Of a stretch of DNA of 64,000 nucleotides, positions 1,017-52,819 are shown in pieces. The position numbers were made by a program, and so were the translations under genes. The stretch's first letter is position 1. Each line of letters opens with the position of its first letter. The stretch spans positions 76,388 to 140,387 of the forward strand of contig NW_018479984.1 in the NCBI RefSeq assembly GCF_002113885.1, written 5' to 3'. This DNA comes from Mizuhopecten yessoensis (taxonomy: Eukaryota). The notes beneath the pieces are model-generated. The model was not told the origin of the DNA and ran no database searches. It saw only the letters and a list, made by a program, of their open reading frames with translations.

Positions 1017-1103
1017 TTCTAAATCCAACAAGACAATCTTGGAAACAGTTTCAAGGTTGACAATAACTGTTAAGGGGAAGTCTTCTATTCCTTTTGTACT
1101 CAC

Positions 1104-1333
1104 CTACAGGATGGGTATTCCCAAACATGTTGTAGTCTGTTCCTATACTAGAGCAGTTCCAACGATTGTTTCTAAATTGATGACGACACTCCTTCATGCC
1201 CATCTGTACTCCCTCCCCAATAGTGACAATAGCGTCTGGTCTTTTCCTACATATAGACCGCTGTTTTGGTGCTAGTCCTGGAATCTTATTACAGATGATG
1301 TTAGCACGGAGGGCCACGACCTGCGAAAGTGCC
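1104..1333 (-). CDS. Wnt7: Wnt7 family ligand, coding exon 2 (230 nt, phase 2 in, phase 1 out)
   Basis: Translates (x)[77 protein letters not shown]. This closely matches WNT7A/7B exon 2 ([41 protein letters not shown]...ECQ.QFR.GRWNCS...VG). Acceptor on minus strand is gtgttttgtttttccag|G at 1334/1333; donor is GTAG|gtgagt at 1104/1103. Intron positions and phases match vertebrate Wnt7. Later exons lie left of the window. Confidence 0.96.
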
Positions 1334-2747
1334 CTGGAAAAACAAAACACAAACAATCAGGAATATGCTAATCAAACAGTGACATATTGTTGTATCATTT
1401 TATTGTTTTTTAATGACGAAGAAACCAATGAGAATTGTTTATGCTTAAATAATCCAGATATATAACAATATGTTAATGACATCATTACGCAGACAAATTC
1501 TAATACAGATTGATCTGCAGTTTTGAAAAAGGTGAAGCTGATATTAGTTTCCTTATCCATTGCTAAAGGTATTTACAATTGAATTCCCAGTGCGTATACT
1601 AGACTTGATAAAATGAGTTTACTGAAAGACTGTTACTTACGATTGTTTCATAATTCATAAATGTGTAAGAAATATTTCTTACATCACATTGTAAGGTAAA
1701 TGCTTGGTTTAAGGAAGAAATATTGGAGACAATTATGGGTAAAAATATGTTTAAGACCTATTATCATACTGTTACATGGAACGTTAATTCTACTACATGT
1801 AATTACATTGTTATCTACATGTCTTAACAATATTAAAAAGGTCTAGCATCTGAAAACATTTCGTGAACGTAAATAACAATAGCTAATGTTCACGATCCGA
1901 ATGTCAACAATAATTTTTTGTATCAGAACGAATGAGATGATTTGTCTAAGACATACGGGTAAAGTATCAAAGGGGATCATTGTATACAGTAACAAAAGTG
2001 CCCGGACCTCGGACGTTCCACCTAACAGTCAATGTTAATATAGCATGTAATATATATATATATTACATTTATGTACAAGTCGTAAAAGGTATATTTACAT
2101 GTTAAATATGTCCTGAAATCAAATGTATAAAAATCTGTCAATTCATATTATTATAAATAATAGCGAAACATGATTTGCTCTATGAGAACGAATAACATGT
2201 CAAATATATTCCTAGTAAAGTCAGAGTGGCGTCAATACCATGTAAAAACCTACACGGGTAAACTTCGCAATGTCGACGTTGTATTGACTACGAAAATATC
2301 TCAAATTAACTTATTCGAGATATCGTATTGATATTATATATATCCATAAACATCTTTGGACCAAAATCTCGACTTCGGCACTCAAGATATCTATGTTCCT
2401 AAAACAAAATTCTATGAAAACTCAATAATATTTTTCTCCAACTAAGTTCATGTTATGGCTTAAATTTGTCCATGTGATAATAGTTGCAGTAAACTCCTAA
2501 ATATAATAATAAAATTCTTATAATAAAATAAATCTAATCATGATTAGAATCGACGATAACAGAGTAAACATACTATATGTTTAAAGTGACGTTAATATTA
2601 TTTCACCAAAAGTAATATCAATTAAATCATATAACAGAATGATTCAATTGAATTATTAAACCGAAGTTGAAGTCCTTATAAAATAAAACTGTACTTAAAT
2701 TTATCGAATCAGATTTAAAGAATTGAGAACACAAACTTTCAACTTAC

Positions 2748-2818
2748 CAGGTGTACACCAAGAGCACTGTGAGGCCCTTGATGAGCGTGAGAATCGATAC
2801 TGTCATCGTAGCAAACAT
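2748..2818 (-). CDS. Wnt7: Wnt7 proximal first coding exon (1a), signal peptide MFATMTVSILTLIKGLTVLLVYT(W)
   Basis: ATG at 2818 with an in-frame TAA three codons upstream. 71 coding nt (23 codons + 2), then donor TG|gtaagt at 2747. Phase 2 joins in frame to exon 2 (TG+G = W, then ALSQVVA). The peptide is hydrophobic, and 71 nt is also the coding length of human WNT7A exon 1 as I recall it. Confidence 0.8.
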
Positions 2819-4225
2819 GCCTAATTATAAGCTCCTAACTGGTTCCCCCGGAGACATATATCAATCTAACCACCAAATCTTATTCACGTTTAGGGAGATA
2901 TGTGTTCATGGTACTAAACGCGTGTAATGCAATTTGTTCAGAGACCATAAACTGGATGTAAATAAATAATTCAGACGCAAATGTGATACAATCATACCCG
3001 GTTAACAACAGGAAGTATAATCACTCCTTACTCATCCCCTAACTCTAATGTAATATACCGTGAAGTGCAGTCTAGAGATGACATCACTAAATCGTTACAC
3101 TGACAAATAATGGTGACCAATTTCATCGATAATAAAACTCTATAGATGAACGTGAGAGATAGGTAAAGGGTCAGTAAGCCTTGCTTTAACTTCATTGCAA
3201 ACGTAACAAATAGGCGACATTCTTCGTACGACATGGGACGCAGCATAAACATATACATCTTATCTATACAGATTGGTATCTAAGACGAGACATCTTTACT
3301 TATAGGTAAAATGTATATAACATGTTAATGTTGCCGGCTTCTAGAATGGCAGCCAGGCGATAAAGTGATTCTCACGCATCTATAAAATATGTACCTTATC
3401 ACACCTACAACATATCATCAGCGGCACTCCTAAAATTTGTTAATCAAATTCCGATTTTGAAAATTGTTAAAACACATTTTTATGTGTAGGTTGATTTTAT
3501 CTCCTATCTGTCAAATCTTCCGACAATTACTTTTATTTTACGAGGAGCAATTACAGATTAAAATGATTTAAATTCAAAAATTTTAAAGATATATTTCAAA
3601 TATTTTGTTTTGTGGTAAATGTTATCTAAAGTAAATATCGGTTGGTGGTGAACGTTTTACTCTAATAGATGGTAGAGGCGCCAGACCACTTCCTAGAAAA
3701 TGCGTATGATTGTAAAAGTAACACTGTCAATAACACAATTTTAAATTACTTCACTTAAATATATCTACAGTGCTGGTAGTTTCAAATTTCCTGTCTCAAA
3801 CAAACACGGTACTCTTCTCCCGTCTGATGACAATATCTCCAGATTGTTATCAGAACCATTCGTTGTTATGACCTGATTGAAGAACATATTATAGTGTGTA
3901 AGAGGAGAGTAAGGAACATACACATAAGTTTATGTTGGTAAATATCACGTAAATCCCGGTCTATGGCAACACAGCCCTGTTAGCGTTTATCTACAAGGTG
4001 TATCTTCTGCCTAGAATTCACAATATACCCAGTATATACTGATACAAAGTAGTATCTATCATACAAAATGACATATAAATATATCGAACAACTCTCCCTG
4101 TTTTTTTTTATTTAAACAAAAATTAATTAATAACTTATTTAATTTCTTTGCAGGTTCAGTTTTGATATTGTACTCTACCTACACCGTTTAACATAGCTTA
4201 CGCAGCTCTGTGGGTGATCTCTGTG

Positions 4226-4252
4226 ATAATGTGAGAAATGTCACAAACAATT
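4226..4252. promoter_or_regulatory. 27-nt motif, copy 1 (contains TGTGAGAA, CSL/Su(H)-type, and TGTCA, TALE-type)
   Basis: ataatgtgagaaatgtcacaaacaatt, identical to 7955-7981; about 1.4 kb upstream of the exon 1a ATG. A regulatory role is inferred only. Confidence 0.4.
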
Positions 4253-6146
4253 CCAGTCTTATTTTTACTGTGTCGTGATCAACGCGTCTTATTTCATCCT
4301 CCTCTTAATTTCTATACTTTAAGGAGTTAACTTCAAAGGTTTAAAATTTAGTGTGATTTGGCATGTTCAACACTTGAGTATTAAATCAGTATTGTCAAGT
4401 GGTTACTCAGTGTTACGAGGGTCATGTTAGAGTAGTGACGAGTTCCACACGCTAGCTAGTATCAGACAGACAACAATGCCATGTCGGTCGGGGACCTATC
4501 ACGCGAAGTTAACATACCACCTTGTCCTTACGTCTGTAGGACTATCCAGAAATATCTACGAACTTAATAAGTTTAACATCGCACTTGTAGACATACTTGT
4601 TCATACACTTAAAATTCGTTAAATAAAAACAAATATTTAAATTGAATTATAAGAATAGAATCTGTTGGAATTTTAGATCAAACAATTTTACAACATTACC
4701 TGTAGTATTTTTGTAGCTTGAAACAAAAAATATCCAGTTATTTAAATATATGAGTTGATATATTTAACTGACAGGGTTTGTGAATTATTTAATGATTAAT
4801 TATTTCAGAAATATAGACATATACTGACATCATATGCTGAGGCCTATTATTTCCTGTTATCAGTCCACCCTTCAATACAATACTAGAGTGATATTTGAGT
4901 GACATCTACCGGCACATATGATCCCACAGTTCAGCTCTAGTTATTTGTTTCAATCCCTGTTAATACAGTACGTTACATGTGAATAGGTAATTTCAAATTA
5001 TCCTGAAATGTGTGTCAGAGTGACAAGTAAACCACTAGACGTCTCAGTGTTCACACTGACCGCCTGTGGTCAAGCTGAGGCCATAGCTAATTTCAACATA
5101 TGCAATGCTCGTACGAGTGTAGGTACATTATAAGATAACAATCTATAAGTTATGTATTCGTCTCTAATATATCATAATTGTCCTTGTATACTTGATTCGC
5201 CCTAGTTCTATATTTGTCTGCTTTCGTTTAAATGTCTGCATATTTTTGTATAACACAGGTTTATCGTTATCCGCCCCAGTTTTATCACTTTTATTCATGT
5301 TACATCTCACGGTATCATTTCTACAAGGTGTTATTTATATTTGAATATTTGAAGTAGGCTCTTGAAGTTTCTCAAATAATAATTTACACATAAACCCTAC
5401 ATGTTTTTTATGACATTGTTGCAGAGTATGCTCGGAAGTCATCCTTTTTAAATATACAGCAGAACTATTATTATACATGTTCAGGTGGTCGGCAATTAAT
5501 GTCGTTAAGAGGATAAACTCAATTTTAAATACTTTTTGCAGTTTGCAAATTAACCTGAAATGGGATCGCGGGATCAGTAGATGCGTGACTATAGTGTCGG
5601 TGTAAAAGTCACTCATGGACGGGTATTTTGCAAACACCTATTATTTATTTAAATACCCCAACTCTAGGTGGTATAGCACTTTGAGAGCAAAGTATTTATT
5701 TAATAGAGTAACCCGATATGCAGTAAACGCTGGTTTAGAACAAAGCTCTCCTCACCAAATAACTAGCGGGTAACGATACCTCGTGTCTAACCCTGATTTA
5801 ATTATATCCACTCCGTCTTAATTAGAACCATTGAGTTTTAAAGATGCCTTCTTGCTAACTCGTCCTGACAGTCTGTGATTGCTTGAACAGTCAAAGAATG
5901 GGCAAAAATGAAATAGATAGCTATACATGGGGGAGCTACGACAAGATCTTCCTACACAAATGGGATCTTTTTACAACAAAACAATGATCATATCCTACGA
6001 GCCTATCTGTACATCTGGGAATGTTATCACTCGCGTTTGAGAGCGGTGGAACTTCAGATAATGTATACCACCTATAGTTTTCATATTCAGTCATAAATGA
6101 TATTAAAAAAAATTGCATAAAATAAAAATGTCTCCCAATTACTCAC

Positions 6147-6220
6147 AAGAAATTTCCGTACACACAATAGGAGAGGTAGAGTATTCCCAGCAAGAACTTG
6201 GTGTGTCTGCTAGCTCCCAT
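6147..6220 (-). CDS. Wnt7: Wnt7 distal alternative first coding exon (1b), signal peptide MGASRHTKFLLGILYLSYCVYGNF(L)
   Basis: ATG at 6220 in strong context (A at -3, G at +4) with an in-frame TGA upstream. 74 nt (24 codons + 2), then donor TT|gtgagt at 6146. Phase 2 joins in frame to exon 2 (TT+G = L). Basic n-region (R, H, K) followed by hydrophobic h-region FLLGILYLSYCVY. Confidence 0.75.
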
Positions 6221-7954
6221 TATCTTCTGTATCTGTAGACATTCTCAGGTCATGCGACAACCCTCTCTGGAGAACTCCGGGTGTATTAACTAACACGACT
6301 ACAACACTGATTAGTGCATTTGTACAAATCCAATTCTGAATACTACAAACTATCTAACACGATATAATCATAATATCATAAGGATCCAAAAATAAAACCC
6401 GGTACAACAGTAATAGAACTGGAGTAACGCCTCGATCCCCACATGGTCCGAACTGAAACAGACAGAGGCAATCTGTTACACTGCTAACCTGTCCGTCTTT
6501 ATGAAATGATCATGTTTGATTGGTTTAAACACTGACAGGTAGGCTGGTTCAAAAACGTCCTCTCGGCGTCAAATTATCATTGGAAGTCACGCTTAATTGA
6601 GCACAAGTTGCCTCCCCCTGGTGTGTATCCAACAAGATAGTGTGAGATACGCTTGGGTCCTCTGTAGTTACATTGCTGGTACCAGGCAGAGTAAACATAC
6701 CTACATATCATATATCGCTCACCTCAAATGCATGTTTATCAGCCAAGTCAAGCATGCCTTTTTATTTCTGTTCGCCTTACAATGATAGTTAAAGTTAATC
6801 TAGGTCCGTCGATCTGTCACCTAAGCACTGTCAAGTAAGATATGATAGCTAGGGTATTACTCCACTCAACAGAAATATAAACAGTCGATGCCCAACAATC
6901 TTTACAGTATTTATTGCTCTCTGTGATTGCCAATACTACTTGATAATATTGGTTTCCTTTGAATATATACACATACATTGAAAGGTTATTGCAAAATGTA
7001 TCCGTGGGCTATTCCAGCAACAAGCCTTTGAATACGGTAATTTTATTTGTATGTGTATTTTGTATTGTGTTCCTGTGACGTGTCCATTAGGTGTCAATGT
7101 TCAAAGTTTACTTTGTCTCATTGCTTGGGCAGTTTTAATTTGGATTAAGCCAACATATAGACAAACAAACGTATATCAGTCATCACTTTAGAACATTTGC
7201 CATATCACATTCCGTAAACGTACGTTGAGTAATTATAAAGGCTGTAGTCAGCTTTTAACTGTTTTTCTAAAACTTTCCTTCTACTTAAAATACCGTAACC
7301 GTTCACTTTGAAATATTTCATAAACGGGCCATTTTTGTTGCAATTTGGTTTATCTTTTAATTTTCCTTTTAATTATGACATGAATGTAAAATGAATACTA
7401 AAGTTAATGCTTACTGATATATATAAAATATCAAAACTTTAGTGTGTGTCATTTGTAGAATATATGTTTTTTTTACACCGTGTCTTGAATTAAAATTCAA
7501 AGTATAATCAGTTACATATATGTTCCTTAGTGCAAATCAGTATATTTCTAACAGTTATGATAGATGTTCATTAAATATTGTTACGTGTAAACTATAAACA
7601 GGCATATCATACTGTAAAAAAGGAATGCTTGTCATCCATTACATGTTCCGCTATATGTTGGATCTAGGTGCACGGGGCTAGTATTCCAGTGATATAAATC
7701 ATGGCTCCTTTTACGTACAATAATCTTAAAAGTTTTCTATATTCACCTTTATTATGGTATCGAGTTTACCTAAATTACATTATCACAAAAGAAGAGAAAA
7801 AAGTCAATCAAGTCCTATTTCGACAAAAGGTTAAACAAAATATAACTAGATGATTAAGAATAAATGAGAGTATCCTATATACAATACAGTGGAAATTGCC
7901 ACTGTATGTTCATTTCAATTATTCCAGAAAACAATTGTCCTTATGATCTCGTCA

Positions 7955-17390: not shown

Positions 17391-20056
17391 ACACAATTAT
17401 AACTTTTGCTGATAGAACGTCAGCTGGAAAAGTTTTCGTGTGTACCTGCTTCACCAAGAACATCGTTACTTTTCTTATTAATGCTTGTTATATCTTAACC
17501 AGAACAGGTACCAAAACATATGTTCGGAATAAAACTCATGTAGTAGATATAATGAGAATTTATTGATAAAAACGCTTTACCGAGGCAGTGTGACCCAAAT
17601 TATTTTTTGTTCCATTTTGTTCCAATCAACCTACTCTGTCTACTCAACAGCTTCAAAGAGCGTTTAATGTAAATAACACCCGGCGTTATAATGATTTTGA
17701 TGATATAACTGCTTTCCTTAAGTTATTGGATCACCCGTCTAATATTAGGAAACTGATGTTCAGGCACAAAATACCGATCTTCCACAACAGATAAAACTAA
17801 ATTGGCAATATACAAATTGACATTTCTTTGTTCTTAATATTATACAACGAATTAACATTAAACTGCAATTCCATGCTTTTCGGTTTAAATCAAATTCTTT
17901 TTGCGAAATAGCGAGTTATTTTCCAGTAGTATATACAGAGATAGACATCCAAACAGTTTTCTAAAAACGTATTTCGTTTTTATTCGTGACAATAAATTGC
18001 AACACATTAGCGTTCCAAATGGAATATCTAATTATGTCAACAGAACTTTGATTTTCTTTCTAATGTATTTTTTTCAAACAGTTGCTACACTAACTTAATA
18101 TACTAAAATAAAATAATTATCTAAGATTGAATCACTGCAAATAAAATTCTTCATATAGTTTCTAAACGTCATTATGAATAATAAAAACAAGTTTAATGGT
18201 CGTCATCATGATTTTTACCATTTTTCCTGTACGATATAGATGTCTTCGTTTTTGCTATGATCGTTACAGTTTCTGTAGTTTCCTATTTACTTTCCTGGTT
18301 CTTTTTGAGACCGTTACGTCACTATGTTTTTTTGTCCTAGGATCACAAGACGTTTATCCTTCACGAATACATGGTCGTGTTGCCGTGAACTTTCCAAAGA
18401 TATCTGTAAAAATATTTGCTTTGTTGGACACTTCGCCAAAATTTCATCATTTTTGAGGTCGAATTTAGGTTCTGATTACACTTCGCTTTTCTCTTGCTTT
18501 CTTCAGATAAAATAATTTCCTGTCAAAAGATCAAGACGGCATTTCAAATAAAAGATTTTGTCTGCGTTACAAGCTGCATATCTCAAAATTTTCTCTCGTT
18601 CCTTTTGTGTTGGTGCCACGCTATTTTCGATTGTAATATCGTTTTTCGTTTCGACTTGACCACATTGTCTTACTCCCATCGAATCCTTACAACGGTATAC
18701 ATCATGACCAGTTTCAAATCTTCTCTCTTGACAGGTTAATAAGTTAATTTTGCGAGACGCTTTGCACATATCAGGTAATTGGCAGTTAGACGTTATCTGT
18801 CCACCCAAAAGGTATCGTCAATACCTCCTCCTCCATCACAGACCAGACAATCCAGGTCACGTCCCCCGTCATCCCCCGAGTGCTCATAATCCAGATCGGT
18901 ACAAATCAAGATGAAAGAACATGTCGTGGACTGTCTACACTCATTTTAAGTCGACATGTACAAATATTTTCTCGACCCCCTTCTTAGGAATCCTCAGATG
19001 TGACACACATCAAACAGTGTTAGCGGTGGACTTTCACATCATATTTTACATATTTGGAGTATTTTCTCAGTGAGACCATAACAGGAATTATGTACACAGG
19101 TAGGTATAAACAATTGTGTTTGTGATGAACAGGTGAGGAATGCCGGTGTTACACAGGTATTACATTGGATGTGTCATATATACATATGGAGATTAAATAT
19201 AATGTCATATAGGTTATACCTTACAAATCAATACGCAGTTTTATTATCGATACATCATTATGTGGTGTCATAAATTTTGAAAGTGACACAGACTTCAGGA
19301 TAAACACTACCAGAAACATATGCATTTAATTGTGTCATATTTATTACCCTTAAACGAAATTTTAATTTATTTAGAATTACATGAAATAAAAATGATAAAA
19401 GTAATATGTGATATAGAGTACAGACAGTTATATTTCAGACCAGCTATGCACATTTGTTTTATGTGACAGGAAATGCCGCTGCATCCTAAGGTATACGCAA
19501 TAGCAACAACTTAAGTAGATACAGACTAGTGGGATTTCTGGGGGGTGGGGCTGCATCAGGTTCAATGAGCCTTTCAGGAGGAAATGACAAATTAAGTATC
19601 TAGACTTGTGTTTCAATGGTTAGAAAAAAGAAATAAGACATTTCTGAAGTATCTTTTGCAAGTAATAATCTTAAATATGCAATTCAAAGACTGCCATTAC
19701 AGAATTAAATAACAAATATATTTAATAGGCATGCAAATAAATTAACATTATATCTTAAACAGTTAAGATACATGCATGTACCTATGTTCTAACGGGCAAG
19801 CAATGTGATTGGTCAGTAATACGCGAAATGCCTACCTATCAATTCAATTTTATAACAATCAGTAAATCAATGTTCAATGTTTAAGTTTCCAGCCTCAGTC
19901 CTGTAGTCAAATGATAACGGGACCTTAAACACTCACATTTTATCTCAAAGATAACAGGGTGAATAGTTGTCTATGGGCGTTAGCGTTGTTGACAATATGC
20001 CTTAATAAAGGGAAATGTTCGGCTGCTAACATCAAACCCCTAATAGAAAACAACCT

Positions 20057-20825
20057 AAGCAAAAACCTTCCGCTACCTTATTCAGGCTCACAACAACCGA
20101 AGCAAAAACCTTCCGCTACCTTATTCAGGCTCGCAACAACTGAAGCAAAAACCTTCCGCTACCTTATTCAGGCTCGCAACAAGCGAAGCAAAATTCTTTT
20201 GCTACCTTATTCAGGCTCGCAACAAGCGAAGCAAAAACCTTTCGCTACCTTATTCAGGCTCGCAAAAACCGAAGCAAAAACCTTCCGCTGCCTTATTCAG
20301 GCTCGCAACAAGCGAAGCAAAAACCTTCCGCTACCTTATTCAGGCTCGCAACAACCGAAGCAAAAACCTTCCGCTACCTTATTCAGACCCGCAACAACAG
20401 AAGCAAAAACCTTCCGCTACCTTATTCAGGCTCACAACAATCGAAGCAAAAACATCCCGCTACCTTATTCAGGCTCGCAACAAGCGAAGCAAAAACCTTT
20501 TGCTACCTTATTCAGGCTCGCAACAACCGAAGCAAAAACCTTCCGCTACCTTATTCAGACTCGCAACAACAGAAGCAAAAACCTTCCGCTACCTTATTCA
20601 GGCTCACAACAACCGAAGCAAAAACCTTTCGCTACCTTATTCAGGCTTGCAACAAGCGAAGCAAAAACCTTCCGCTACATTATTCAGGCTGGCAACAACA
20701 GAAGTAAAAACCTTCCGTTACCTTATTCAGGCTCGCAACAACCGAAGCAAAAACCTTTCGCTACCTTATTCAGGCTCGCAACAAGCGAAGCAAAAATCTT
20801 TCGCTACCTTGTCTCGGCTCGCAAT
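20057..20825 (+). repeat. 43-bp tandem array, about 18 copies
   Basis: Unit aagcaaaaaccttccgctaccttattcaggctcgcaacaaccg, starting at 20057, 20100 and so on. Confidence 0.97.
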
Positions 20826-21379
20826 TCTTTATTGTAAGAAATTATAAAAGACCTCCTATCTGAACCCTGTAAGACCATTAATATGATGGGTAATAACTTG
20901 TAGTGCTGGCCTATCGGTGATGGATCATGCGTATGATTCCACACTTGTTTCTGATTTTATTTATATCTTTTCTTGTTGATATTAACTCAGCCTTGTTACC
21001 TTCTAAGGAGGTTGAACTCTCACAGCTATTATAATCCTTTTAAGACAGTTCCATGTTAAGTGGCGGTAGACGATACTAACAAGGAATTCAGGAAATAACG
21101 TGTATTTAAATTTATATATACTTCATGAAAATATTTATGTGATAACTGGTGACAACTAATAAAAATAAGCCAAGTACTTGCACAATCCTCATTCCCTGAT
21201 GATGCAAGGTTTGATCGAAACGACCTATTCACATCAATTTTATCAGGTGTGTACTTAGACACTCGAAAACACATTCTGCAATTCCACTACGCTAACAGGG
21301 ATGCTAAAAAATATGTCAGGACAGTTGGCAGACATCATAAATATTAGAGTATAATGTTGTGTTAAGCATTAACGGTTGT

Positions 21380-24300
21380 CAAATGTACGCCGACCGCACT
21401 CCCATGTCTATCATACATATCACTACCATACATATAACTACCATACATATCACTACCATCCATATCACTAACATACATATCACTACCATCCATATCACTA
21501 ACATACATATCACTACCATCCATATCACTACCATACATATCAACATATCACTATCATACATATCACTACCATACATATAACCACCATACTCAAATGTACC
21601 CCGACCGCACTCCCATGTCTATCATACATATCACCACCATACCTATAACTACCATACATATCACTACCATACATATAACTACCATACATATCACTTCCAT
21701 CCATATAACTACCATCCATATAACTACCATACATATCACTACCATACATTTCACTACCATCCATATCACTACCATACATATCACTACCATACATATCACT
21801 ACCATACATATCACTACTATACATATCACTGTCATACATATCACTACCATGCATATCACTACCATCCATATAGCTACCATCCATATCACTCCCATACTTA
21901 TCACTACCATACATATCACTACCATACATATCACTACCATCTATATCACTGCCATACAGATCACTACCATCCATATCACTACCATACATATCACCATCAT
22001 ACATATCACTACCATACATATCACTACCATACATATCACTATCATACATATCACCACCATACATATCACTACCATACATATCACCACCATACACATCACT
22101 ACCATCCATATAACTACCATACATATCATTACCATCCATATAACTACCATATATATCACTTTCATACATAGCACCACCAAACATATAACTACCATACATA
22201 TCACCACCATACATATCACGACCATACATAGCACCACCATACATACCACTACCATACATATCACTACCATCCATATCACTAACATACATATCACTACCAT
22301 ACATATCACTACCATACATATCACTACCATACATATCACTACCATACATATCACCACCATACATATCACTACCATAAATATCACTACCATACATATCACT
22401 ACCATCCATATCACTAACATCCATATCACTAACATACATATCATTACCATACATATCACTACCATACATATCACTCCCATACATATCACCACCATACATA
22501 TCACTACCATACATATCACCACCATACATATCACTACCATACATATCAATACCATATATATCACTACCATAAATATCACTACCATACATATCACTACCAT
22601 CCATATCACTAACATCCATATCACTAACATCCATATCACTAACATACATATCAATACCATACATATCACTACCATACATATCACTACCATCCATATCACT
22701 ACCATACATGTCACCACCATACATATCACTACCATACATATCACCACCATCCATATCACTACCATACATATCACTACCATACATATCACTACCATACATA
22801 TCACCACCATACATATCACTACCATACATATCACTACCATCCATATAACTACCATATATATCACCACCATACATAGCACTACCATACATATCACCACCAT
22901 ACATATCACTACCATACATATAACCACCATACATATCACTACCATACAAAACACTACCATACATATCACTACCATACATATCATTACCATCCATATCACT
23001 ACCATACATATCACTACCCTACAGATCACTACCATACATATCAGTACCATCCATATCACTACCATCCATATCACCACCATACATATCACTACAATACATA
23101 TCATTACCATCCATATAACTACCATATATATCACCACCATACATATCACTACCACACATATCACTACCATACATATCACTACCATACATATCATTAACAT
23201 CCATATCACTACCATACATATCACTACCATACATATCACTACCCATACATATCACTATCATACATACCACTACCACACATATCACTACCATACATATCAC
23301 CACCATACATATCACTACCATACATATCACTATCATACATACCACTACCACACATATCACTACCATACATATCACTACCATACATATAACTACCATACAT
23401 ATCACTACCATACATATCAGTACCATCCATATCATTACCATACATATCACCGCCATACGTATCACTACCATACATATCACCACCATCCATATCACTACCA
23501 TACATATCACCACCATACACATCACTACCATCCATATAACTACCATACATATCACTATCATACATATCACCACCATACATATCACTACCACACATATCAC
23601 TACCATACATATCACTACCATACATACCACTACCACACATATCACTACCCTACATATATCACTACCATACATATCACTACCATCCATATCCACCATCATA
23701 CATATCACTACCATACATATCACCACCATACACATCACTACCATCCATATAACTACCATACATATCACTACCATACATATCATTACCATCCATATCACTA
23801 CCATACATATCACTACCATACATGTCACCACCATACATATCACTACCATACATATCATTACCATCCATATCACCACCATCCATATAACTACCATACATAT
23901 CACCACCATACATATCAATACCATACATATCAGTACCATACATATCACTACCATACATATCACCACCATACATATACATATCACTACCATACATATCACT
24001 ACCATCCGTATCACTACCATTCACTATCACTTCCTCACATAACGTCTAGTAGATACATATCACTACCATACATATCACTACCATCCGTATCACTACCATT
24101 CACTATCACTTCCTCACATAACGTCTAGTAGATACATATCACTACCATACATATCACTACCATCTATATCACTATCATACATATCACTACCATATATCAC
24201 TACCATACATATCACTACCATCCATATCACCACCATACATATCATTACTATCCATATCATTACCATACATATCACTACCATACATGTCACTACCATACAT

Positions 24301-25143
24301 ATCACTACCATACATATAACCACCATACATGTCACTCCCATACATATCACTACCATACATATAACTACCATCCATATAACTACCATACATATCACTATCA
24401 TACATATCACCACCATACATATCACTACCATACATACCACTATCATACATACCACTACCACACATATCCCTACCATACATATCACTACCATACATATCAC
24501 AACCATTCATATCACTACCATACATATCATTACCATCCATTTCACTACAATACATATAACTATCATACATATCACTACCATACATATCAGTACCATACAT
24601 ATCACTACCATACATATCACCCATCCATATCACTAACATACATATCATTACCATACATATCACTACCATACATATCACTACCATACATGTCACTACCATA
24701 CATATCACTACCATACATATCATTAACATCCATATCACTACCATACATATCACTACCATACATACCAATACCATCCAAATCACACCCATAAATATAACTA
24801 TCATACATATCACTACCATACATATCACTACCACACATATCACTACCATACATATCCCTACCATACATATCACTACCATCCGTATCACTACCATTCACTA
24901 TCACTTCCTCACATAACGTCTAGTAGATACATATCACTACCATACATATCACTACCACCATCCATATCACTACCATACATATCACCACCATACATATCAC
25001 TACCATACATATCACTACCATCCATATCACCACCATACATATCATTACTATCCATATCATTACCATACATATCACTACCATCCATATCACTAACATACAT
25101 ATCACTACCATTCACTATCACTTCCTCACATAACGTCTAGTAG
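21380..25143 (+). repeat. 15-bp minisatellite (about 240 copies) with duplicated unique head and tail segments
   Basis: Unit catacatatcactac. Head caaatgtac.ccgaccgcactcccatgtcta at 21380 and 21591. Tail ccattcactatcacttcctcacataacgtctagtag at 24017, 24096, 24891 and 25108. Confidence 0.98.
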
Positions 25144-27540: not shown

Positions 27541-28214
27541 TGTAACTAATTCCTACGCGGCTTGAATCGTTGTTTGTAAAACCACGATATTGATCACTCA
27601 ACGATGTCGTTCATATTATAATAGACCAAAGTTCCACAAAACGTTGCCGTCGTTAATCATGCTTATCTAATTCTCATAAGTTCAATTTCTAAAATTCCAA
27701 AAAGAAACGCTTGTTTAATGTCGTTTTTGAATAAACATGTTTAATCATAGTCAATCGTCGGGGAGCCTCCATTAAGCATGGTACGACTTGCCGATATTAA
27801 ATTTAGCAAGAACCTACGTATGGTCTTACAATCACCTATTTCAAGCATGATATCCAATCGGTACCAAGATAATGTTTCCATCGTGACGTCATAATTATTT
27901 GGTTTTCAGCTGTTCAGCTAAGCCGTTTCTCCTGAAATCGTTTACCTGGCGTCGTTCTTCTGAACTCATTTTCCTGAAGGCGTTCTTCAGAAGTCGTTCT
28001 CCTTAAGTCATCATCATTCAAACATATTTTATTGAAGGAAAAACAATCAAATGGATTGGGCACAAGTTCTGACAACTTACAAGGCCTTCTCCCAACACTG
28101 CAACACACAGTAACTAAAGATATAACACGTGATGACAAAAAGTTCAGCATATATGCATTGACAATCTACTACGCCTGACGTCGTTCTGCTCAAGACGTTT
28201 TCCTGAAGACATTA

Positions 28215-28990
28215 ATCTGAAGTCGTTCTCGTGAAGTCATTCACCTGAAGTCGTTCTCATGAAATCATTCACATGGGTCGTTCTCATGAAATCGTTCACC
28301 TGAAGTCGTTCTCATGAAATCATTGACCTGAAGTCGTTCTCATGAAATCATTCTCATGGGTCGTTCTCATGAAATCGTTCACCTGAAGTCGTTCTCATGA
28401 AATCATTCTCATGGGTCGTTCTCATGAAATCGTTCACCTGAAGTCGTTCTTATGAAATCATTGACCTGAAGTCGTTCTCATGAAATCATTTACCTGAAGT
28501 CGTTCTCATGAAATCATTCACCTGAAGTCGTTCTCATGAAATCATTAACCTGAAGTCGTTCTCATGGAATCATTGACCCGAAGTCGTTCTCATGAAATCA
28601 TTAACCTGAAGTCGTTCTCATGGAATCATTGACCCGAAGTCGTTCTCATGAAATCATTAACCTGAAGTCGTTCTCATGAAATCATTGACCTGAAGTCGTT
28701 CTCATGAAATCATTCCCCTGAGGTCGTTCTCATGAAATCATTGACCTGAAGTCTTTCTCATGAAATCATTGACCTGAAGTCGTTCTCATGAAATCATTTA
28801 CCTGAAGTCGTTCTCATGAAATCATTTACCTGAAGTCGTTCTCATGAAATCATTAACCTGAAGTCGTTCTCATGAAATCATTGACCTGAAGGCGTTCTCA
28901 TGAAATCATTGACCTGAAGTCGTTCTCATGAGATCATTCACCCGAAGTTGTTCTCATGAAATCATTAACCTGAAGTCGTTTTCATGAAGT
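28215..28990 (+). repeat. 28-bp tandem array (dimer of 14-mers) with degenerate 14-bp flanks
   Basis: Unit cctgaagtcgttct+catgaaatcattga. Diverged 14-bp units at 27920-28010 and 29075-29435. Confidence 0.96.
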
Positions 28991-31900
28991 CAAGTCACAA
29001 AGTATGAAGTGTTGATGATGAACAGTATCAACTTGCCGACAGGTGACCCTTATCCGATGCTAAACGGAGTTGCATGTTTTCCTGAAGTTATTTGCTGAAG
29101 TCGTTATACCGAAGTCGTTCTTTTGAAGTTATTTGCTTGCAGTCGTTCTCCTCCCGAAGCCGTCTCCTGAAATAGTTCTTCTGAACCATAAGGATGTTCC
29201 TGGGAAGAACTTCTCATATGAAGCTTTTCCCCTTTAGTCGTTCTTCTGCAGTCGTTCTATAGGAGCCCTTCCCCTATACTTGTTCCATTGAACCCTGAAA
29301 TTATTCTTCATAAGTCATTCTCAAAAAGTAGCTTTCTGAAATTGTTCATATAAAATCGTTTTCCTTGAATTATTATCTCGAAGCCGTTCTCCTAAGTGGT
29401 TCTGTTGAAGTCATTCTTCCGGAGCCGTTCTCATGGAGGATCATCATTATGCAAAATGTCAATTTGCATTTTAAATTCGTTATGTAAACCTTTACTGATC
29501 GGATCTGATGTCTGTATTCAGTTTTAGAGGATGGTGTCTTGGCCCCATTCTACAGATCATTAAACCTTCCAAACATCCCAGAGAGAGGGCTAGGTACATC
29601 ACGTGATGTTGATTTGACTAATCACAGCCGCTCTTGTAGGGTCACATTAACGCTTACAGCGGACTCGGACTGAAACACGTGTTCAACGGCAAGAGAATAT
29701 CATCAAGACGGTCACGCGCTTGTGTCCCGACATCGTAGTGCCTTGTTTGAAATACATATGACATAGTGCCTGGGCTAGGATTTCTTCATCACGATGCTTG
29801 TGTGTCTTTATTGATGCTAAGGTCGAGGAAAGCCATGCCAATACATGTGTTAGCTACAATAATATCACTTATGAGTCATATCTCACTTGTATCATTAAAA
29901 CGAATGAATTAGGTCTAATGACCAAATGTGACCAGTATTGTTGAGTGCGCGTGTTTTTGTGTTTATTTTGTATTTCAGTTGCCATTTCTATTGATATTTT
30001 GCGTGGAGTCAGAGATGCTCTTAATAAAATAATAATAAAATAAATCAAATATTTAAAACTTATGAAATATGAATAGATATTGAAGGATAGAGATGGAAAC
30101 ATTGTCAGTTTTTTTCGCGTGGTCACCATCATCCATGTAATATCTAAACGAACATCTATTGAAGGCAATTCCGTTAATATACATAAGTATTAAGGAAAAT
30201 AATATTTACATAGCTTGGTTAGGAATGAAAAGAGAGATAGCGAGATATTTACACGATGCCTCGTAAGACTTGGAGAGTTAACAATCTGTTTACAATATAC
30301 TACACTTTCTCAATTTAACCGTGAACATATTTAAATTCATGTATGTCTTGTGACACGATAAATTATATTCCTTCTATAAGACGTCTTTCCTGATTGAAAA
30401 CGTTAAATTTTCATTCAAAATGCACGGAGTGGAAGCTACATCAATATAAACTCTGTGTTATATGACGACCAACACCAGGGGCTAAAAAACACATGAAATA
30501 CTTGATATATCACAGGTTTTGCAAATGTAATCTTTATAGTACCAAACCAAATTCAAATATACAAAAGATAAAGAATAACACCTCCATAAAATGGCACCTC
30601 ATTTACTGCTAACTTCTAGGTAGTCATTTTCCTCCTTTTGGAAGGTGCAATCATAATAACTGCCATTGTAAGAGTAATCCTCAAAACTATCACCATATTC
30701 CGTCATCACGTTGATCTTCACTCGAGAAATATGAACGGTAGAGCCTTACAAAGGGAGATAAGTCTCGCTAGATACCAACAACCAATACTTGTTTTTTACT
30801 CTAAAGTTGCATGGATAATTAGTTTGACTCGAGTAATCTTTTCATTTTCACAAATGAAACTTCTACCAGTGTTGGGAATATAATGTTTTGACAGAGTTTA
30901 CAAAAGTGTGAAAAGGCTTCGTCTATATCGTAAAGAATGGTTCCGGACGATTTCGTTTTTAAGAAATGATTATATTTATTAATCAAGATTTTCTTATAAC
31001 GGTTAAATATGAAAGTAGGCAAAGTTATTGAGGATTTATCCGTTATAAGCTGAACCAGGTAAATGCAATTTCTATGCGTGTATACAACCTTCTCCAAATA
31101 TATGAGGACCTAGGATTGACCTGAAGCATGAAGTGTGACAGTTTTTAGACTTAATTTTCTTAATTTTCAATAGTGTTATATATAAAAAAAAAAAACAATT
31201 TTCTTTGATAACACAGAAAATCCATTACAATATTGTATCTTTCAAAATCCTGAAGAAGACCATCTTGAGTTATACGAACAATTAATAGAACACTTTGTAC
31301 AACGTGAGCTATTCTGATATCTTGCATATAGTTGTAACGTTGATACATATCTTGATAAATAAACACACATGACTGCTAACACAGGGTGTTTAAATGATGT
31401 TTTTTACAGACACCACCGACAACGCCGCGTGGAATACCATTCTCATTCCTTTTGTAGGATAGGCTGCAATTAAGATTTGACAATGTCACATACATTGATT
31501 GTCAGTTACAAAATGAGATAGTCAGTCCTGTATTTGTTCTCGCTATTTGACCGTTTGAACTGACCACCCTGCCTAGACCACATATCAGCAATAATCGGAG
31601 GAACATTATCACGAGATCCTTATCCATAGGTATTGTGAATGTCTACATACATTTCAATTACAGATATGATATCATACATGTTTACGATGACATAAGCGAC
31701 CCCAATCATGTTATCAAGATCTTCAGCGACATTCCAGTGCTATCTGATAGGGCCTGTCTATTAAACACATTCTTTATATAATAATTTCGAGGGATATTTT
31801 ATTACCCTTATTTCCGGTCTACACGATCAGGTACATCACTATTGACATGTAGGTAATAAGGAACGCTGTGTCCTGTTTCTATGACGACAGTTTTACCTAA

Positions 31901-32171
31901 CCGGGGTTACGAGATGACAGTCATATCGTTAAAACTCGGCTTTTACCTACACGCGACACGGACATCCTATCAAAATACTTCGTCGCCGTTAAAAAGAATA
32001 TTGACGACTTCCCTAATATATCTCCTCAACTTTCCTTCATTCAATTATAATCAAACTCCTACATAATATAATTTTAAATGCCCTTTTCCAAGGTCCGATA
32101 CGTGCTTTGTTAAGAAATATGACCGCTCCGACACATTGAATATTGTTCGCCTTATTAGGAAAAATGTCCGT

Positions 32172-33118
32172 TTGAAGCTACGTTATAATGGGGCCCGTTA
32201 TAATGAAGCTACATTATAATGGGTCCCGTTATAGTGAAGCTACGTTATAATGGGGCCCCTTATATTTACGCTACGTTATAGTGAGGCTACGTTATAATGG
32301 GCCCCATTATAATGTAGCTTCATTATAATGGGGCCCGTTATAGTGAAGCTACGTTATAATGGGGCCCGTTATAGTTACGCTACGTTATAGTGAAGCTACG
32401 TTATAATGGGGCCCGTTATAATGAAGCTACGTTATAATGGGGCCGTTATAGTGACGCTACGTTATAATGGGGCCCGTTATAATGAAGCTACGTTATAATG
32501 GGGCCCGTTATAATGAAGCTACGTTATAATGGGGTCCGTTATAGTGAAGCTATGTTATAATAGGGCCCGTTATAGTGAAGCTACGTTATAATGGGCCCCA
32601 TTATAATGAAGCTACGTTATAATGGGTCCCGTTATAATGCAGCTACGTTATAATGGGGCCGTTATAATGAAGCTACGTTATAATAGGGCCGTTATAATGA
32701 AGCTACGATATAATGGGGCCCGTTATATTGAAGCTACGTTATAATGGTGCCGTTATAGTGAAGCTACGTTATAATGGGTCCCGTTATAGTGAAGCTACGA
32801 TATAATTGGGCCCGTTAAAATGAAGCTACGTTATAATGAGTCCCGTTATAAGGAAGCTACGTTATAATGGGTCCCGTTATAATGAAGCTACGTTATAATG
32901 GGTCCCGTTATAGTGAAGCTACGTTATAATGGGGCCGTTATAATGAAGCTACGTTATAATGGGGCCCGTTAAAATGAAGCTACGTTATAATGGATCCCGT
33001 TATAATGAAGCTACGTTATAATGGGTTTCGTTATAGTGAAGCTACGTTATAATGGGTCCGTTATGGTGAAGCCACGTTATAATGGGGCCCGTTATAGTGA
33101 AGCTACGTTATAATGGGT
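32172..33118 (+). repeat. 31-bp quasi-palindromic tandem array, about 30 copies
   Basis: Unit gaagctacgttataatggggcccgttataat. Confidence 0.97.
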
Positions 33119-33284
33119 TGTGTAGCGCTGAATGGTCATTCTTTGATACAATCAGAGATTTACTAAGAAAGTTACAGAATATCATCCTAGTTTACTGTTT
33201 TCAGACTCGATAATTACCTACAATGTTGCTATATTTAATGTTTAAATGTTGATACTAATGTCAAAAGTTTTACCAAAACATACA

Positions 33285-35460
33285 TGTTACAATAGTTTAC
33301 AAAGTCTACATTGTATCAATGTAACAACAGTTTATCAAACCTATAAATGTAACAACAGTTCATGTAACCTATTAATGTAACTACAGTTTACCAAACCTAT
33401 GAATGTAACAACAGTTTACCAAACCTATAAATGTAACAGCAGTTTACCAAGCCTATAAATGTAACAACAGTTTACCAAATCTATAAATGTAACTACAGTT
33501 TACCAAATGTATAAATGTAACAACAGTTTATCAAACCTATAAATGTAACAACAGTTTATCAAACCTATAAATGTAACTACAGTTTACCAAACCTATGAAT
33601 GTAACAACAGTTTACCAAATCTATAAATGTACCAACAGTTTGCCAAACCTATAAATGTAACAACAGTTTACCAAACCTATAAATGTAACAATACTTTACC
33701 AAGCCTATAAATGTAAAACATTTTACCAAGCCTATAAATATAACAACAGTTTACAAAGCCTCTAAATGTAACAACAGTTTACCAAACCAAGTAATGTAAC
33801 AACAGTTTACTAAACCTAGTAATGTAACAACAGTTTACCAAACCTATAAATGTAACAACAGTTTACCTATAAATGTAACAACAGTTTACCAAACCTATTA
33901 ATGTAACAACAGTTTACCAAGCCTATAAATATAACAACAGTTTACCAAGCCTATAAATGTAACAACAGTTTACCAAGCCTATTAATGTAACTACAGTTTA
34001 CCAAGCCTATAAATGTAACTACAGTTTACCAAACCTATAAATGTAACTACAGTTTACCAAACCTAGTAATGTAACAACAGTTTACGAAACCTATAAATGT
34101 AACAACAGTTTACCAAACCTATTAATGTAACAACAGTTTACCAAGCCTATAAATGTAACTACAGTTTACCAAGCCTATAAATGTAACAACAGTTTACCAA
34201 GCCTATTAATGTAACTACAGTTTACCAAGCCTATAAATGTAACTACATTTTACCAAGCCTATAAATGTAACTACAGTTTACCAAACCTAGTAATGTAACA
34301 ACGGTTTACGAAACCTATAAATGTAACAATAGTTTACCAAACCTATAAATGTAACAACAGTTTACCAAACGTATTAATGTAACAATAGTTTACCAAGCTT
34401 ATAAATGTAACAATAGTTTACCAAGCCTATTAATGTAACTACAGTTTACCAAGCCTATAAATGTAACTACATTTTACCAAGCCTATAAATGTAACTACAG
34501 TTTACCAAACCTAGTAATGTAACAACGGTTTACGAAACCTATAAATGTAACAATAGTTTACCAAACCTATAAATGTAACAACAGTTTACCAAACGTATTA
34601 ATGTAACAACAGTTTACCAAACCTATAAATGTAACAAAAGTTTACCAAACCTATAAATGTAACTACAGTTTACCAAACCTATAAATGTAACAACAGTTTA
34701 CCAAACCTATAAATATAACAACAGTTTACCAAGCCTATAAATGTAACTACAGTTTACCAAACCTAGTAATGTAACAACAGTTTACCAAACCTATAAATGT
34801 AACAACAGTTTACTAATCCTAGTAATGTAACAACTGTTTACCAAACCTATAAATGTAAATACAGTTTCCCAAACCTATAAATGTAACTACAGTTTCCCAA
34901 GCCTATAAATATAAAAACAGTTTACCAAACCTATAAATATAACAACAGTTTACCAAGCCTATTAATGTAACTACAGTTTACCAAACCTATAAATGTAACA
35001 ACAGTTTACCAAGCTTATAAATGTAACAACAGTTTACCAAGCCTATTAATGTAGCTACAGTTTACCAAGCCTATTAATGTAACTACAGTTTACCAAACCT
35101 ATAAATGTAACAACAGTTTACCAAACCTAGTATTGTAACAACAGTTTACCAAACCTATAAATGTAAAAACAGTTTACCAAACCTATAAATGAAACAACAG
35201 TTTACCAAACGTATTAATGTAACAACAGTTTACCAAACCTAGTATTGTAACAACAGTTTACCAAACCTATAAATGTAAAAACAGTTTACCAAACCTATAA
35301 ATGTAAAAACAGTTTACCAAACCTATAAATATAACAATAGTTTACCAAGCCTATAAATGTAAAAACAGTTTACCAAGCCTATAAATGTAAATACAGTTAA
35401 CCAAACCTATAAACGTAACTACAGTTTACCAAACCTATACATGTAGTAGTGTTTACCCAA
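33285..35460 (+). repeat. 28-bp tandem array, about 77 copies
   Basis: Unit aatgtaacaacagtttaccaaacctata; degenerate tail extends to about 35720. Confidence 0.98.
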
Positions 35461-38400
35461 CCTAATAATTAGATAATGAAGTATACCAAACCTAATAATT
35501 TACCAATACTTTACCAAAATATAAATATGCAAATATTTTACCTAGATATTTAATGACCATTACTTACCAAACTTTTAAGTATATAATTAGCTTGCCCAAC
35601 TTTTATATTATACCAACAGTTTAAAAACATAATAATGTACCAATAGTTTACCAAACATATCAATATACAAACACTTTCCCATACCAACAGTTTATATTTA
35701 TATAACAATAGTTTTCCAAACTGGGAAGGTTTCCTCCTATAACTGGGAAGTGTATTGCTTTGTTGAAGTGGGTTTTGTATGGCCTTGGAATTGTCGACAG
35801 TTCAGGCCCTTCTTATGAATTGCAATGGACAAAGAAAATTAACTTGACTATTTAAGGCATGCAGTATTTCACAAACTGACATTCCACATCAATCTTTGTG
35901 TGCCTTCATTACGTAGAAATGATGTATTGGTGTAAAATTGCGTATATTCAAAACAAACAAAAAGTTTGAAAAATTAGAAAAATCGATAGGTTATGCACTT
36001 AATAATAATTGTCGAATTATTCTAGTTCAATGGATAATTTATACTCACGCGTGCATCTCAATTTTGAACTATGAATTGCATTCTTCGAAACATATTTGTC
36101 ATATTGAGTTACACAGTACTCATTTACATATCAGTATCATATTTGTGTTGAGATGTTTTACCCACAGGGTGTGAAAAGGTTTATGCAATTATAAAGAGAA
36201 AAAAAGGCAGAGATTTTTCAAAATGTAAATAGTTATTGCGACAGCGAGAGTGTAGGTAAATCGACCTACACACGAAGGGCCGCGCCGGAAGTACTGGAGT
36301 GTCGGGTATTCAGAGCAGCAAGCCAATACAACCTATATATTCACTTTTGAAATAGTACACAGAATGCAAATATATTTCGATTGAATGGGTGATAAGAAAC
36401 AAATAAATTATAATCAAACACTGACAGTAATGAAGACAGAACAATCTTGTGTTATACATATCTCTATCATAGTAATGAGATACGAAAATGCTAATTGTGA
36501 CGTAGCGGTTTTATATGTCGTCCAAGTTGGGTGACATTAGTAAGATAGATGTATTCTGTTACCATGACGAACAGATAAACACTGCTTGATGCAGTTCCGA
36601 TCCACTTCCGGTCCCGTACTGGACTCACCAATAAACCGCATACACACCACCCGGGCTAGCACGGGTGCATCACTAAATCACATCGCTAAACCACAGCGAT
36701 TATATGATGGACATTTAAGGGGGAAATTACAGGCCCGGAAAGTTGTGTTTATTACCGGAAACGGAGGATGGTTTTACATATATCCATCAATGTTCTGATC
36801 ATCTGTTTTTCAATCAAACATGTGTCATAAAAAGCTTCGATGACTTCCAGAAGGCATATACCAATATTGTCTTTATTTCATTTCCTATTAAATTATAAAC
36901 CACTACATTTGACATTATCAATCGATACTTTCGCTTACAGCTAGCCCGTGATAAACAATATCTTAAATCTTTATAAAGACCTGTTCAAAGATCCAAAAAA
37001 TACAAGTTCTCATCGACAATTGGAATCTCATTGCGACAATAGAAAATAGTGGGGTTCAAATAATTTAAAACGTTGTAGACTTCAGTCAACTCCAATCCCA
37101 TTATTTCGATGTAACACTCCCACGAAAATACATATATATAATATTATAACATAACAGCAGTAAATTCATCATTACGGACGAAGAAATTATATAAAAAGAA
37201 AAAACTCAACAACATGTCATTAGCACTTTCTTCTCATCAAGATAATTGTCTGAAGAATCTCCTTGCTGAGATGAAAGTGCTTATGAAATGTTGCTGAGGT
37301 TGTATTTTTCCATTATATATATATATATTAGATTGGAAACTGTATGACGTCGACGAGAAAACAAAAATAATGGTAATATCACCATGTTTTTTGTTATCGG
37401 CATGAACTTGGTCACCATCGTGTCTATTATGAACAAGGTATGACGCAGCCCTGGGGTGTGCATCTCTGTTTGTTTGATTGGTTCCGACCTCGATCAACAA
37501 ATGTTGTTTTATTACGGTATCAGCGGTTGTGTTATTGACATATCTGTTCCATGGTCACAATTTGAACTCATTTAAAACTCTTGTTAACTGTGATCTATCC
37601 TAAGTCTGATACACCCGGACCTCAGGTAGGACATTACTGGTATTTTATAACTGAATCGAGGTTAATGTATCAGATAAAAACAGTTCATTACATTAAAACC
37701 AGCCAATTCGGAGAACACCCAGTTCTTTAATGATCCAGCTATTCAATAAGATAGTATATCAAATGTCGCCCGGGCTTTCCTATTCATAACCTTGTGAATT
37801 CTTGTTTCTTTCATACCCTTATAGTAACGTATACCCAACAATGAAATGTAAAGATAAGAAAAAATATAGATCTTGTTTAAACAAACAAGCGACTATGATA
37901 GAAGGTATTGACGCAATACTTACAGAACCACAGCGATATGGGCCGACCAGAGGTACTTGGTACGATGAAAACAACGCATTAGGTTCACTTTGGTTCGTCG
38001 TCAAATCCTACAAACTATTTTACACACAACTATCACTTCCCATTTTTTTCTTTTATAAGAATGAAACACTAAAACTTATCATTAAATACATTCACATCTT
38101 GAAATGTTTATCCTCGCCTTCCAACTGAGCTTTTTGTCCGAGGCCATGTGGCAGTCCTTTCTACATTAACGCGGCCTATCAGAGGGGGTACGTTCCCTTT
38201 CCGATATCCTCCGGCTTCAGATCTTGTTGCAATTTAGTCTAACGTATTGATATATAACAACCGCCTCGTGTACACATTGTCCGTTTTATCGGCTCCCGTC
38301 CGCTGTGTCTGTATATAACAAATAGATGTAATTGCTTAATACTTGAGCATGTGTTAGGGTCCTGGCTGGGCGAGTGACGCTCAACGAACACTTTTTGTGG

Positions 38401-51944: not shown

Positions 51945-52290
51945 ACTGGTTACTCAGGACACCCATGGTTACCCAGGATACCCTTGGTTACCCATGACAC
52001 CCATGTTACACAAGACACCCCTGGTTCCTCAGGACACCCATGGTTACCCAGGACACCCATGGTTACCCAGGACACCCATGGTTACCCAGGACACCCATGG
52101 TTCCTCAGGATAGCCCTAGTTCCTCAGGACACCAATGGTTACCCAGGACACCCATGGTTACTCAGGATACCCCTGGTTCCTCAGGACACCCCTGGTTACC
52201 CAGGACAATCCTAGTTACCCAGGACACCCATGGTTACCCAGGACACCCATGGTTACTCAGGACACCCCTTGTTCCTCAGGACACCTCTGG
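51945..52290 (+). repeat. 19-bp GC-rich minisatellite, about 18 copies
   Basis: Unit ggttacccaggacacccat. Confidence 0.96.
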
Positions 52291-52819
52291 TCACCAAGTT
52301 CATCATGCCACGCTTCCATGTCAAAGTCAAGACATGTTAGTGTGTAGGTACAATAGACTTGCCCTTAACTGACCCCGCCATTTTATAACACCGTTGTACG
52401 TTGATCTTAGCTGGTACTATGACGTACAACAAAAAAGAACCATTTCGTACAAGGATTATTTACCTTACGGAAAACTATGGGACTTAAACAAGGCTACTAT
52501 ACATTGATTTGTACCAATTTCATATATCACGAAGGCCAATAGTTTCAATGATACTATTATCACATAGTATTGATGAGAAATAAAAGGCAAGGCAACATGC
52601 ATAGCACGAAACCTTTTACATAAACATGAAACATAAAGCAATACATATACCAATGTATAGAAAAGTGTGTGATGGGAATTGTACACACTAACAACCATTA
52701 CATGTCTAAAAGGATCAAACAGGTTGGCTGAAGGCTATGAAGAGTGAACCGTCCATTCGTCACACCAACAAACATACAACCTCCTACCCCCACTCTCATA
52801 GCCCAACTCGCCCTCACAC

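What the first reader, a model, noticed from the sequence alone, without database searches (positions are those of the whole stretch)
2748..6220. Two alternative signal-peptide first exons for an invertebrate Wnt7
Seen: two separate ATG-initiated mini-exons, both missed by the ORF track. Each has an upstream in-frame stop, a consensus donor (gtaagt or gtgagt), the phase 2 that exon 2 requires, and a hydrophobic ~24-aa leader. Known: vertebrate Wnt7b uses alternative first exons, giving MHR- and MLL-starting isoforms. The distal exon here ends YGNFL|ALSQVVAL, reminiscent of the SGSYL|ALSSVVAL junction I recall for the MLL isoform. Inference: the dual-promoter, dual-signal-peptide design of Wnt7 may be ancestral to bilaterians, or convergent, and could allow tissue-specific expression or secretion.
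Basis: partly seen in the sequence, partly recalled or inferred. Interest (0 to 1): 0.82.

Follow-up and report, generated by a model that had tools for sequence, protein, structure and literature searches.

The report
Alternative leader exons of scallop Wnt7
Both mini-exons are real features of the Yesso scallop Wnt7 gene, which has four interchangeable first exons, but all four are already in the public RefSeq annotation and only the distal one is ancient.

Summary
The window is a Mizuhopecten yessoensis contig carrying the 5' half of a Wnt7 gene on the minus strand. The distal one has its ATG at 6220 and the proximal one at 2818. Each has a consensus donor, phase 2 and an upstream in-frame stop.

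RNA-seq shows the junction 6147->1333 in two runs (22 reads) and nothing over the proximal exon. RefSeq nevertheless lists both as isoforms X2 and X3. It also lists two further leaders: X4, with ATG at 37979, and X1, about 9 kb beyond the window.

The proximal exon is conserved in Pecten maximus and Argopecten irradians. It has a fixed donor, an open frame and changes concentrated at third codon positions, so it is probably a genuine, rarely used first exon.

All four leaders look like signal peptides. The likely cleavage site (V-V-A) lies in shared exon 2, so the mature ligand should be the same for every isoform. The design therefore reads as alternative promoters.

Only the distal leader is conserved across molluscs. 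The other three are scallop-specific, and oysters, mussels and vertebrates have unrelated alternative leaders. An ancestral two-leader design is not supported.

The parts
1104..1333 (-). Shared exon 2 of Wnt7. It begins with the c-region of the signal peptide and the putative V-V-A cleavage motif. Acceptor ttccag, donor GTGAGT at 1103.
   Evidence: Translation. PF00110 match, E 6.8e-16. Best solved relative is human Wnt-7a, 8tzo. RNA reads cover it and continue into exon 3 outside the window.
2748..2818 (-). Proximal alternative first coding exon, equal to RefSeq isoform X3 (P0316:1-24). 71 nt of CDS, phase 2, donor GTAAGT.
   Evidence: Coordinates. Orthologous exons in P. maximus (annotated isoform X2, P0311) and A. 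irradians. Variable sites by codon position are 6/3/12, p = 0.02. None of 703 control windows looks alike. No RNA reads in four runs.
2819..2994 (-). Conserved block directly upstream of the proximal exon. It is a candidate 5'UTR or promoter; this is inferred.
   Evidence: 73-83% identity among three scallops. Alignability collapses just after the donor.
6147..6220 (-). Distal, canonical first coding exon, equal to RefSeq isoform X2 (P0319:1-25). 74 nt of CDS, phase 2, donor GTGAGT.
   Evidence: Junction 6147->1333 in 8 reads (X23) and 14 reads (X24), plus 3 loose ends. 22 of 25 residues identical in Tegillarca granosa. Variable sites 3/1/10, p = 0.004.
6221..6440 (-). 5'UTR of the distal-exon transcript. 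The upstream end is approximate.
   Evidence: RNA depth is 2.7-6.5 up to 6422 and nearly zero beyond.
6450..6650 (-). Conserved block upstream of the distal transcript start. It is a candidate core promoter; this is inferred.
   Evidence: 86-94% identity among three scallops.
37924..37979 (-). Third alternative first coding exon inside the window, equal to RefSeq isoform X4 (P0314:1-19). 56 nt of CDS, phase 2, donor GTAAGT.
   Evidence: Exact match. ATG, open frame and GTRAGT donor are kept in P. maximus and A. irradians. Annotated as isoform X3 in A. irradians.

Best explanation
This is the 5' part of the Mizuhopecten yessoensis Wnt7 gene, named Wnt-7b-like in RefSeq. The gene has four mutually exclusive first coding exons.

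In order from 5' to 3' they are:
- X1, about 9 kb beyond the window end;
- X4, ATG at 37979;
- the distal exon, ATG at 6220;
- the proximal exon, ATG at 2818.

Each supplies an ATG and the charged and hydrophobic parts of a signal peptide. Each ends in phase 2 and splices to the same exon 2 at 1333.

Shown: the distal exon is the main one used in the sampled RNA.

Inferred:
- Each leader has its own promoter.
- The signal peptide is cut after the V-V-A motif encoded by exon 2, so every isoform yields the same mature ligand.
- The isoforms therefore differ in where, when and how efficiently Wnt7 is made, not in what is secreted.

The distal leader is ancestral. The other three arose within scallops.
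For: - Species and annotation: the top hit of the exon-wise profile lies on a contig of 250,859 bp, the same length as the window's contig. Its cluster holds RefSeq isoforms X1-X4, which differ only before the shared 327 residues.
- The leaders of X2, X3 and X4 map exactly to 6220, 2818 and 37979. X1 maps to contig 149085-149215.
- The distal junction is seen in two RNA runs.
- All four leaders sit in the same order in P. maximus and A. irradians, with ATG and donors kept.
- Third-position bias marks the distal and proximal exons, backed by an empirical null of 0 in 703 windows.
- All four N-termini have a charged start, an uncharged run of 17-27 residues, and V/A at -3/-1.
Against: - No read covers the proximal exon in the three runs that express the gene. 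All 25 reads that reveal the upstream exon point to the distal one.
- I could not see what evidence RefSeq used for X3, X4 and X1.
- A. irradians has ATA in place of the first ATG of the proximal exon, and the exon is not annotated there.
- The X1 and X4 leaders show no codon-position bias.
- Signal-peptide status and the cleavage site rest on simple rules. No SignalP run or experiment was available.
Confidence: 0.8

Rival explanations
1. Only the distal exon is used. On this view the proximal mini-ORF is a conserved non-coding element, such as an intronic enhancer, that happens to be open. Gene-prediction pipelines then picked it up as a possible 5' end.
For: - Zero RNA depth over 1448-6024 in all four runs.
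- Intron 1 holds several other blocks of 80-90% identity that are not exons.
- The first ATG is lost in A. irradians.
Against: - Changes concentrate at third codon positions (6/3/12), and none of 703 control windows looks alike.
- There are no indels within the 72 nt, while the flanks have them.
- GTAAGT is fixed in three species and conservation ends right after it.
- Two independent RefSeq annotations, M. yessoensis and P. maximus, chose the orthologous exon.
- The one chance mini-ORF outside the repeat arrays is not conserved.
Confidence: 0.15
2. The leaders change the protein's fate and not just its expression. Some might act as uncleaved signal anchors, or route Wnt7 to a different secretion path, giving functionally distinct isoforms.
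For: - The leaders differ greatly in length: 19 to 44 residues, or 26 to 51 counted up to V-V-A. They also differ in charge.
- The proximal leader has a lysine in the middle of its hydrophobic stretch.
Against: - The V-V-A motif followed by L is shared by all isoforms and by vertebrate Wnt7a/7b.
- The X1 and X4 leaders evolve fast without codon-position bias. That fits a loosely constrained, removable peptide.
Confidence: 0.12
3. A two-promoter, two-leader Wnt7 was already present in the bilaterian ancestor, and the scallop exons are orthologues of the vertebrate MHR-type and MLL-type exons.
For: - Alternative leaders occur in scallops, oysters, mussels, a limpet and vertebrates.
- Oysters have a short exon in intron 1 that, like the scallop proximal exon, starts with MFA and ends with W.
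Against: - The alternative leaders of different lineages share no detectable similarity.
- The proximal leader is absent from the Ostrea-like and Tegillarca loci, with E 0.76 or worse.
- Tegillarca intron 1 has no second leader candidate.
- Only the distal type is shared across phyla.
Confidence: 0.07

Closest known systems
RefSeq models of M. yessoensis Wnt-7b-like, isoforms X1-X4 (XP_021340929.1 to XP_021340932.1)
   Different: Nothing differs.
Vertebrate Wnt7b alternative first exons (MHR-type and MLL-type leaders)
   Same: Mutually exclusive first exons encode only the leader, and each joins the same exon 2, which begins ALSSVVAL.
   Different: The alternative leaders share no sequence similarity with the scallop ones. 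There are two leaders against four. Orthology of any alternative exon is not shown.
Oyster and mussel Wnt-7b isoforms (Magallana gigas X1-X5, Ostrea, Saccostrea, Mytilus)
   Same: The canonical leader of the distal type is accompanied by lineage-specific alternative leaders. Several oyster isoforms also occur as full-length products in Logan assemblies.
   Different: The alternative leader sequences differ. The oyster intron-1 exon is also used as an internal cassette, which the in-frame TAA upstream forbids for the scallop proximal exon.

Membership tests
Wnt family (PF00110) | Match to the Wnt domain across the coding exons | tested here: met
   Exons 2, 3 and 4 match PF00110 positions 2-56, 62-151 and 152-305, with E 6.8e-16, 1.8e-31 and 2.1e-61. 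The exons were searched separately.
Wnt7 subfamily | Closest to Wnt7a/7b rather than to other Wnt subfamilies | tested here: met
   The best solved relative of exon 2 is human Wnt-7a. All named top hits of the exon-wise profile are Wnt-7a or Wnt-7b. A Wnt5-like gene lies upstream on the same contig.
Alternative first exons | Each first exon is seen spliced to the common exon 2 in RNA | tested here: inconclusive
   The distal junction is seen in two runs, 22 reads. The proximal exon has zero reads in the same runs. RefSeq isoforms exist for all four.
Alternative first exons | Each alternative exon is conserved as an open, spliceable unit in related species | tested here: met
   Order, ATG, frame and GTRAGT donor are kept in P. 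maximus and A. irradians. There are two exceptions. A. irradians has ATA at the first ATG of the proximal exon. The P. maximus assembly has one extra G in the distal exon.
Alternative first exons | A separate transcription start for each exon | not testable with these tools
   Only the distal transcript's 5' end could be roughly placed, near 6430-6450. No CAGE or 5' RACE data were available.
Cleavable signal peptide | Charged start, hydrophobic core, and small residues at -3 and -1 | tested here: inconclusive
   Rule-based only. Net charge before the core is +1 to +3, the uncharged run is 17-27 residues, and V/A sit at -3/-1 in all four isoforms. SignalP was not available.
Orthologue of the vertebrate MLL-type Wnt7b exon | Sequence or positional correspondence with that exon | tested here: not met
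   The distal exon shares only the final L with the MLL type. Its GNFL ending and 25-aa length are those of the canonical invertebrate leader.

The most novel reading that the evidence does not exclude
Wnt7's leader exon may be a freely replaceable module, because the cleavage site sits in exon 2. Lineages would then keep recruiting new promoter-plus-leader exons: four in scallops, at least three in oysters, two in mussels and two in vertebrate Wnt7b. In Pecten maximus the ancestral leader may even be frame-broken, with a scallop-specific leader taking over.
Probability: 0.3. Interest if true: 0.5.

Novelty: already known. Interest (0 to 1): 0.3.

Why it matters
This adds little new biology, because the isoforms are already in RefSeq for three scallop species. 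There are two useful points. The sequence rules alone correctly recovered two annotated leader exons. The comparison also shows that only one Wnt7 leader is ancient, while the others are lineage-specific additions. If the leader-turnover reading holds, Wnt7 would be a tidy example of how a developmental ligand gains new expression domains by adding promoters, without changing the secreted protein.

Tried and rejected
- After the reads and the Ostrea-like contig, I first took the proximal exon for a chance ORF. I dropped that reading once RefSeq X3, the P. maximus orthologue and the codon-position pattern appeared.
- I searched for the proximal leader in the Ostrea-like, Tegillarca and GCA_019648995.1 loci and found only noise.
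- The oyster intron-1 exon as a homologue of the proximal exon: the two share their first 8 nt and the final W, but lengths differ (45 against 71 nt). This stays unresolved.
- The fifth mini-ORF at 12076-12009 is not conserved.
- The proximal region is single-copy in this genome.
- No DNA was served for the Ylistrum balloti locus, because the gene range is too long.
- Isoform-specific look-ups of P0311 and P0315 were not on record.
- Five paper searches found no description of mollusc Wnt7 leader isoforms, nor of the vertebrate Wnt7b ones.
I reran it from stored protein ids.
- I did not build or search a joined spliced model. Exons were used separately by reference, and the full-length isoforms are those the database returned.

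Full report
**What is there.** On the minus strand, exon 2 of a Wnt gene runs from 1333 to 1104 behind a ttccag acceptor. Two short ATG-started exons lie upstream. The distal one runs 6220-6147 with donor GTGAGT. The proximal one runs 2818-2748 with donor GTAAGT. Both end in phase 2, as exon 2 requires, and both have an in-frame stop upstream.

**Chance.** I scanned the whole window on both strands for ATG...GTRAGT phase-2 mini-ORFs of 15-60 aa and found nine.
- Five lie in minisatellite arrays.
- Three are annotated leaders.
- One (12076-12009) is not conserved in other scallops.

Such an exon in the 4.8-kb intron is therefore not expected by chance.

**RNA.** I laid four raw RNA-seq runs of the same species on 1050-7000.
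- Three runs express the gene.
- The junction 6147->1333 is seen in 8 and 14 reads, and three further loose ends carry distal-exon sequence.
- Depth is zero from 1448 to 6024 in every run, including the proximal exon.
- Coverage upstream of the distal ATG stops near 6430-6450.

The distal exon is thus the main first exon in these samples. Use of any other leader is below roughly one in ten there.

**Identity.**
- Exons 3 and 4 lie outside the window on the same contig.
- All three shared exons match PF00110.
- The nearest solved protein is human Wnt-7a.
- I searched the exons separately, and as separate rows of an alignment with a database Wnt7a. I made no joined model.
- The top hit is Wnt-7b-like isoform X1 of Mizuhopecten yessoensis. 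It lies on a contig of 250,859 bp, the same length as the window's contig.

**The turn.** That protein's cluster holds four RefSeq isoforms of this gene, which differ only before the shared 327 residues.
- X2 carries the distal leader.
- X3 carries the proximal leader.
- X4 carries a 19-aa leader that maps to 37979-37924.
- X1 carries a 44-aa leader at contig 149085-149215, beyond the window.

The finding is therefore already in the public annotation, and it is only half of the picture.

**Is the proximal exon real?** Whole-gene loci of Pecten maximus (L022) and Argopecten irradians (L023) hold all four leaders in the same order.
- The P. maximus counterpart of the proximal leader is 20 of 24 residues identical and is annotated as its isoform X2.
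- In a three-species alignment, the exon sits at the 3' edge of a conserved block, and alignability collapses right after the fixed GTAAGT.
- Variable sites fall 6/3/12 on codon positions (p = 0.02). The figures are 3/1/10 for the distal exon and 4/0/33 for exon 2.
- Of 703 ungapped non-exonic 72-nt windows of the same alignment, 27 are open in all three species and none shows such a third-position share.
- A. irradians lacks the first ATG but keeps the fifth-codon ATG.

I put the odds that this exon is truly used at about 0.8. The missing reads are the main doubt.

**How it likely works.** All four N-termini have a positive start and an uncharged stretch of 17-27 residues. All have V and A at -3 and -1 of the V-V-A motif, which exon 2 encodes. 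The same motif is present in vertebrate Wnt7a and Wnt7b. From memory, the human WNT7A signal peptide is annotated as ending at that motif. I infer that the leaders are removed and the mature ligand is identical. The four exons then mainly reflect four promoters, with possible differences in translation or ER targeting.

**Evolution.**
- The distal leader is nearly unchanged in ark clam, pearl oyster, mussel, gastropods and a cephalopod. Its GNFL ending recurs in an onychophoran.
- The proximal, X1 and X4 leaders were found only in scallops.
- The Ostrea-like and Tegillarca loci have no counterpart of the proximal leader.
- Oysters, mussels and a limpet have other, unrelated alternative leaders. 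Vertebrate Wnt7b has the MHR and MLL types.

This pattern fits repeated lineage-specific gain rather than an ancestral two-leader gene. Leaders this short could, however, lose recognisable similarity over such distances.

**Verdict.** The feature is already annotated and is of modest interest.

Noticed in passing
L022:58508-58583 (Pecten maximus, GCA_902652985.1): The canonical distal-type leader exon has one extra G (GG to GGG) 12 nt before its donor. This puts the ATG out of frame with exon 2. RefSeq lists no canonical isoform for this species. It may be a real loss or a homopolymer assembly error.
   Followed up: partly
L023:52218-52289 (Argopecten irradians): The proximal-type exon has ATA in place of the first ATG. 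It keeps the fifth-codon ATG, the open frame and the GTAAGT donor. It is not annotated as an isoform there.
   Followed up: partly
It is absent, at up to 3 mismatches, from the P. maximus and A. irradians Wnt7 loci, so it is not a conserved element.
   Followed up: partly
contig C76657:174619-218441, minus strand, outside the window: A second Wnt gene lies upstream of Wnt7. Its last exon matches Wnt-5a best, so Wnt5 and Wnt7 are linked here.
   Followed up: partly
window 20049-25122, 28174-35526, 38879-46974, 51919-54511: The large introns between the leader exons are filled with minisatellite arrays; two examples are a 15-nt unit in about 246 copies and a 30-nt unit in about 273 copies. These arrays explain the window's long ORFs and its extreme GC skew. 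Five of the long ORFs were scanned against Pfam; none has a Pfam match above the curated cut-off.
   Followed up: yes
L013:3218-3262 (Ostrea-like Logan contig): The oyster intron-1 exon is used both as a first exon and as an internal cassette in RefSeq isoforms. It shares its first 8 nt and its final W codon with the scallop proximal exon. Homology is unresolved.
   Followed up: partly
window 6241-6209: An upstream ATG in the distal 5'UTR opens a short out-of-frame reading frame that overlaps the main start codon. This was read from the sequence and not analysed further.
   Followed up: no
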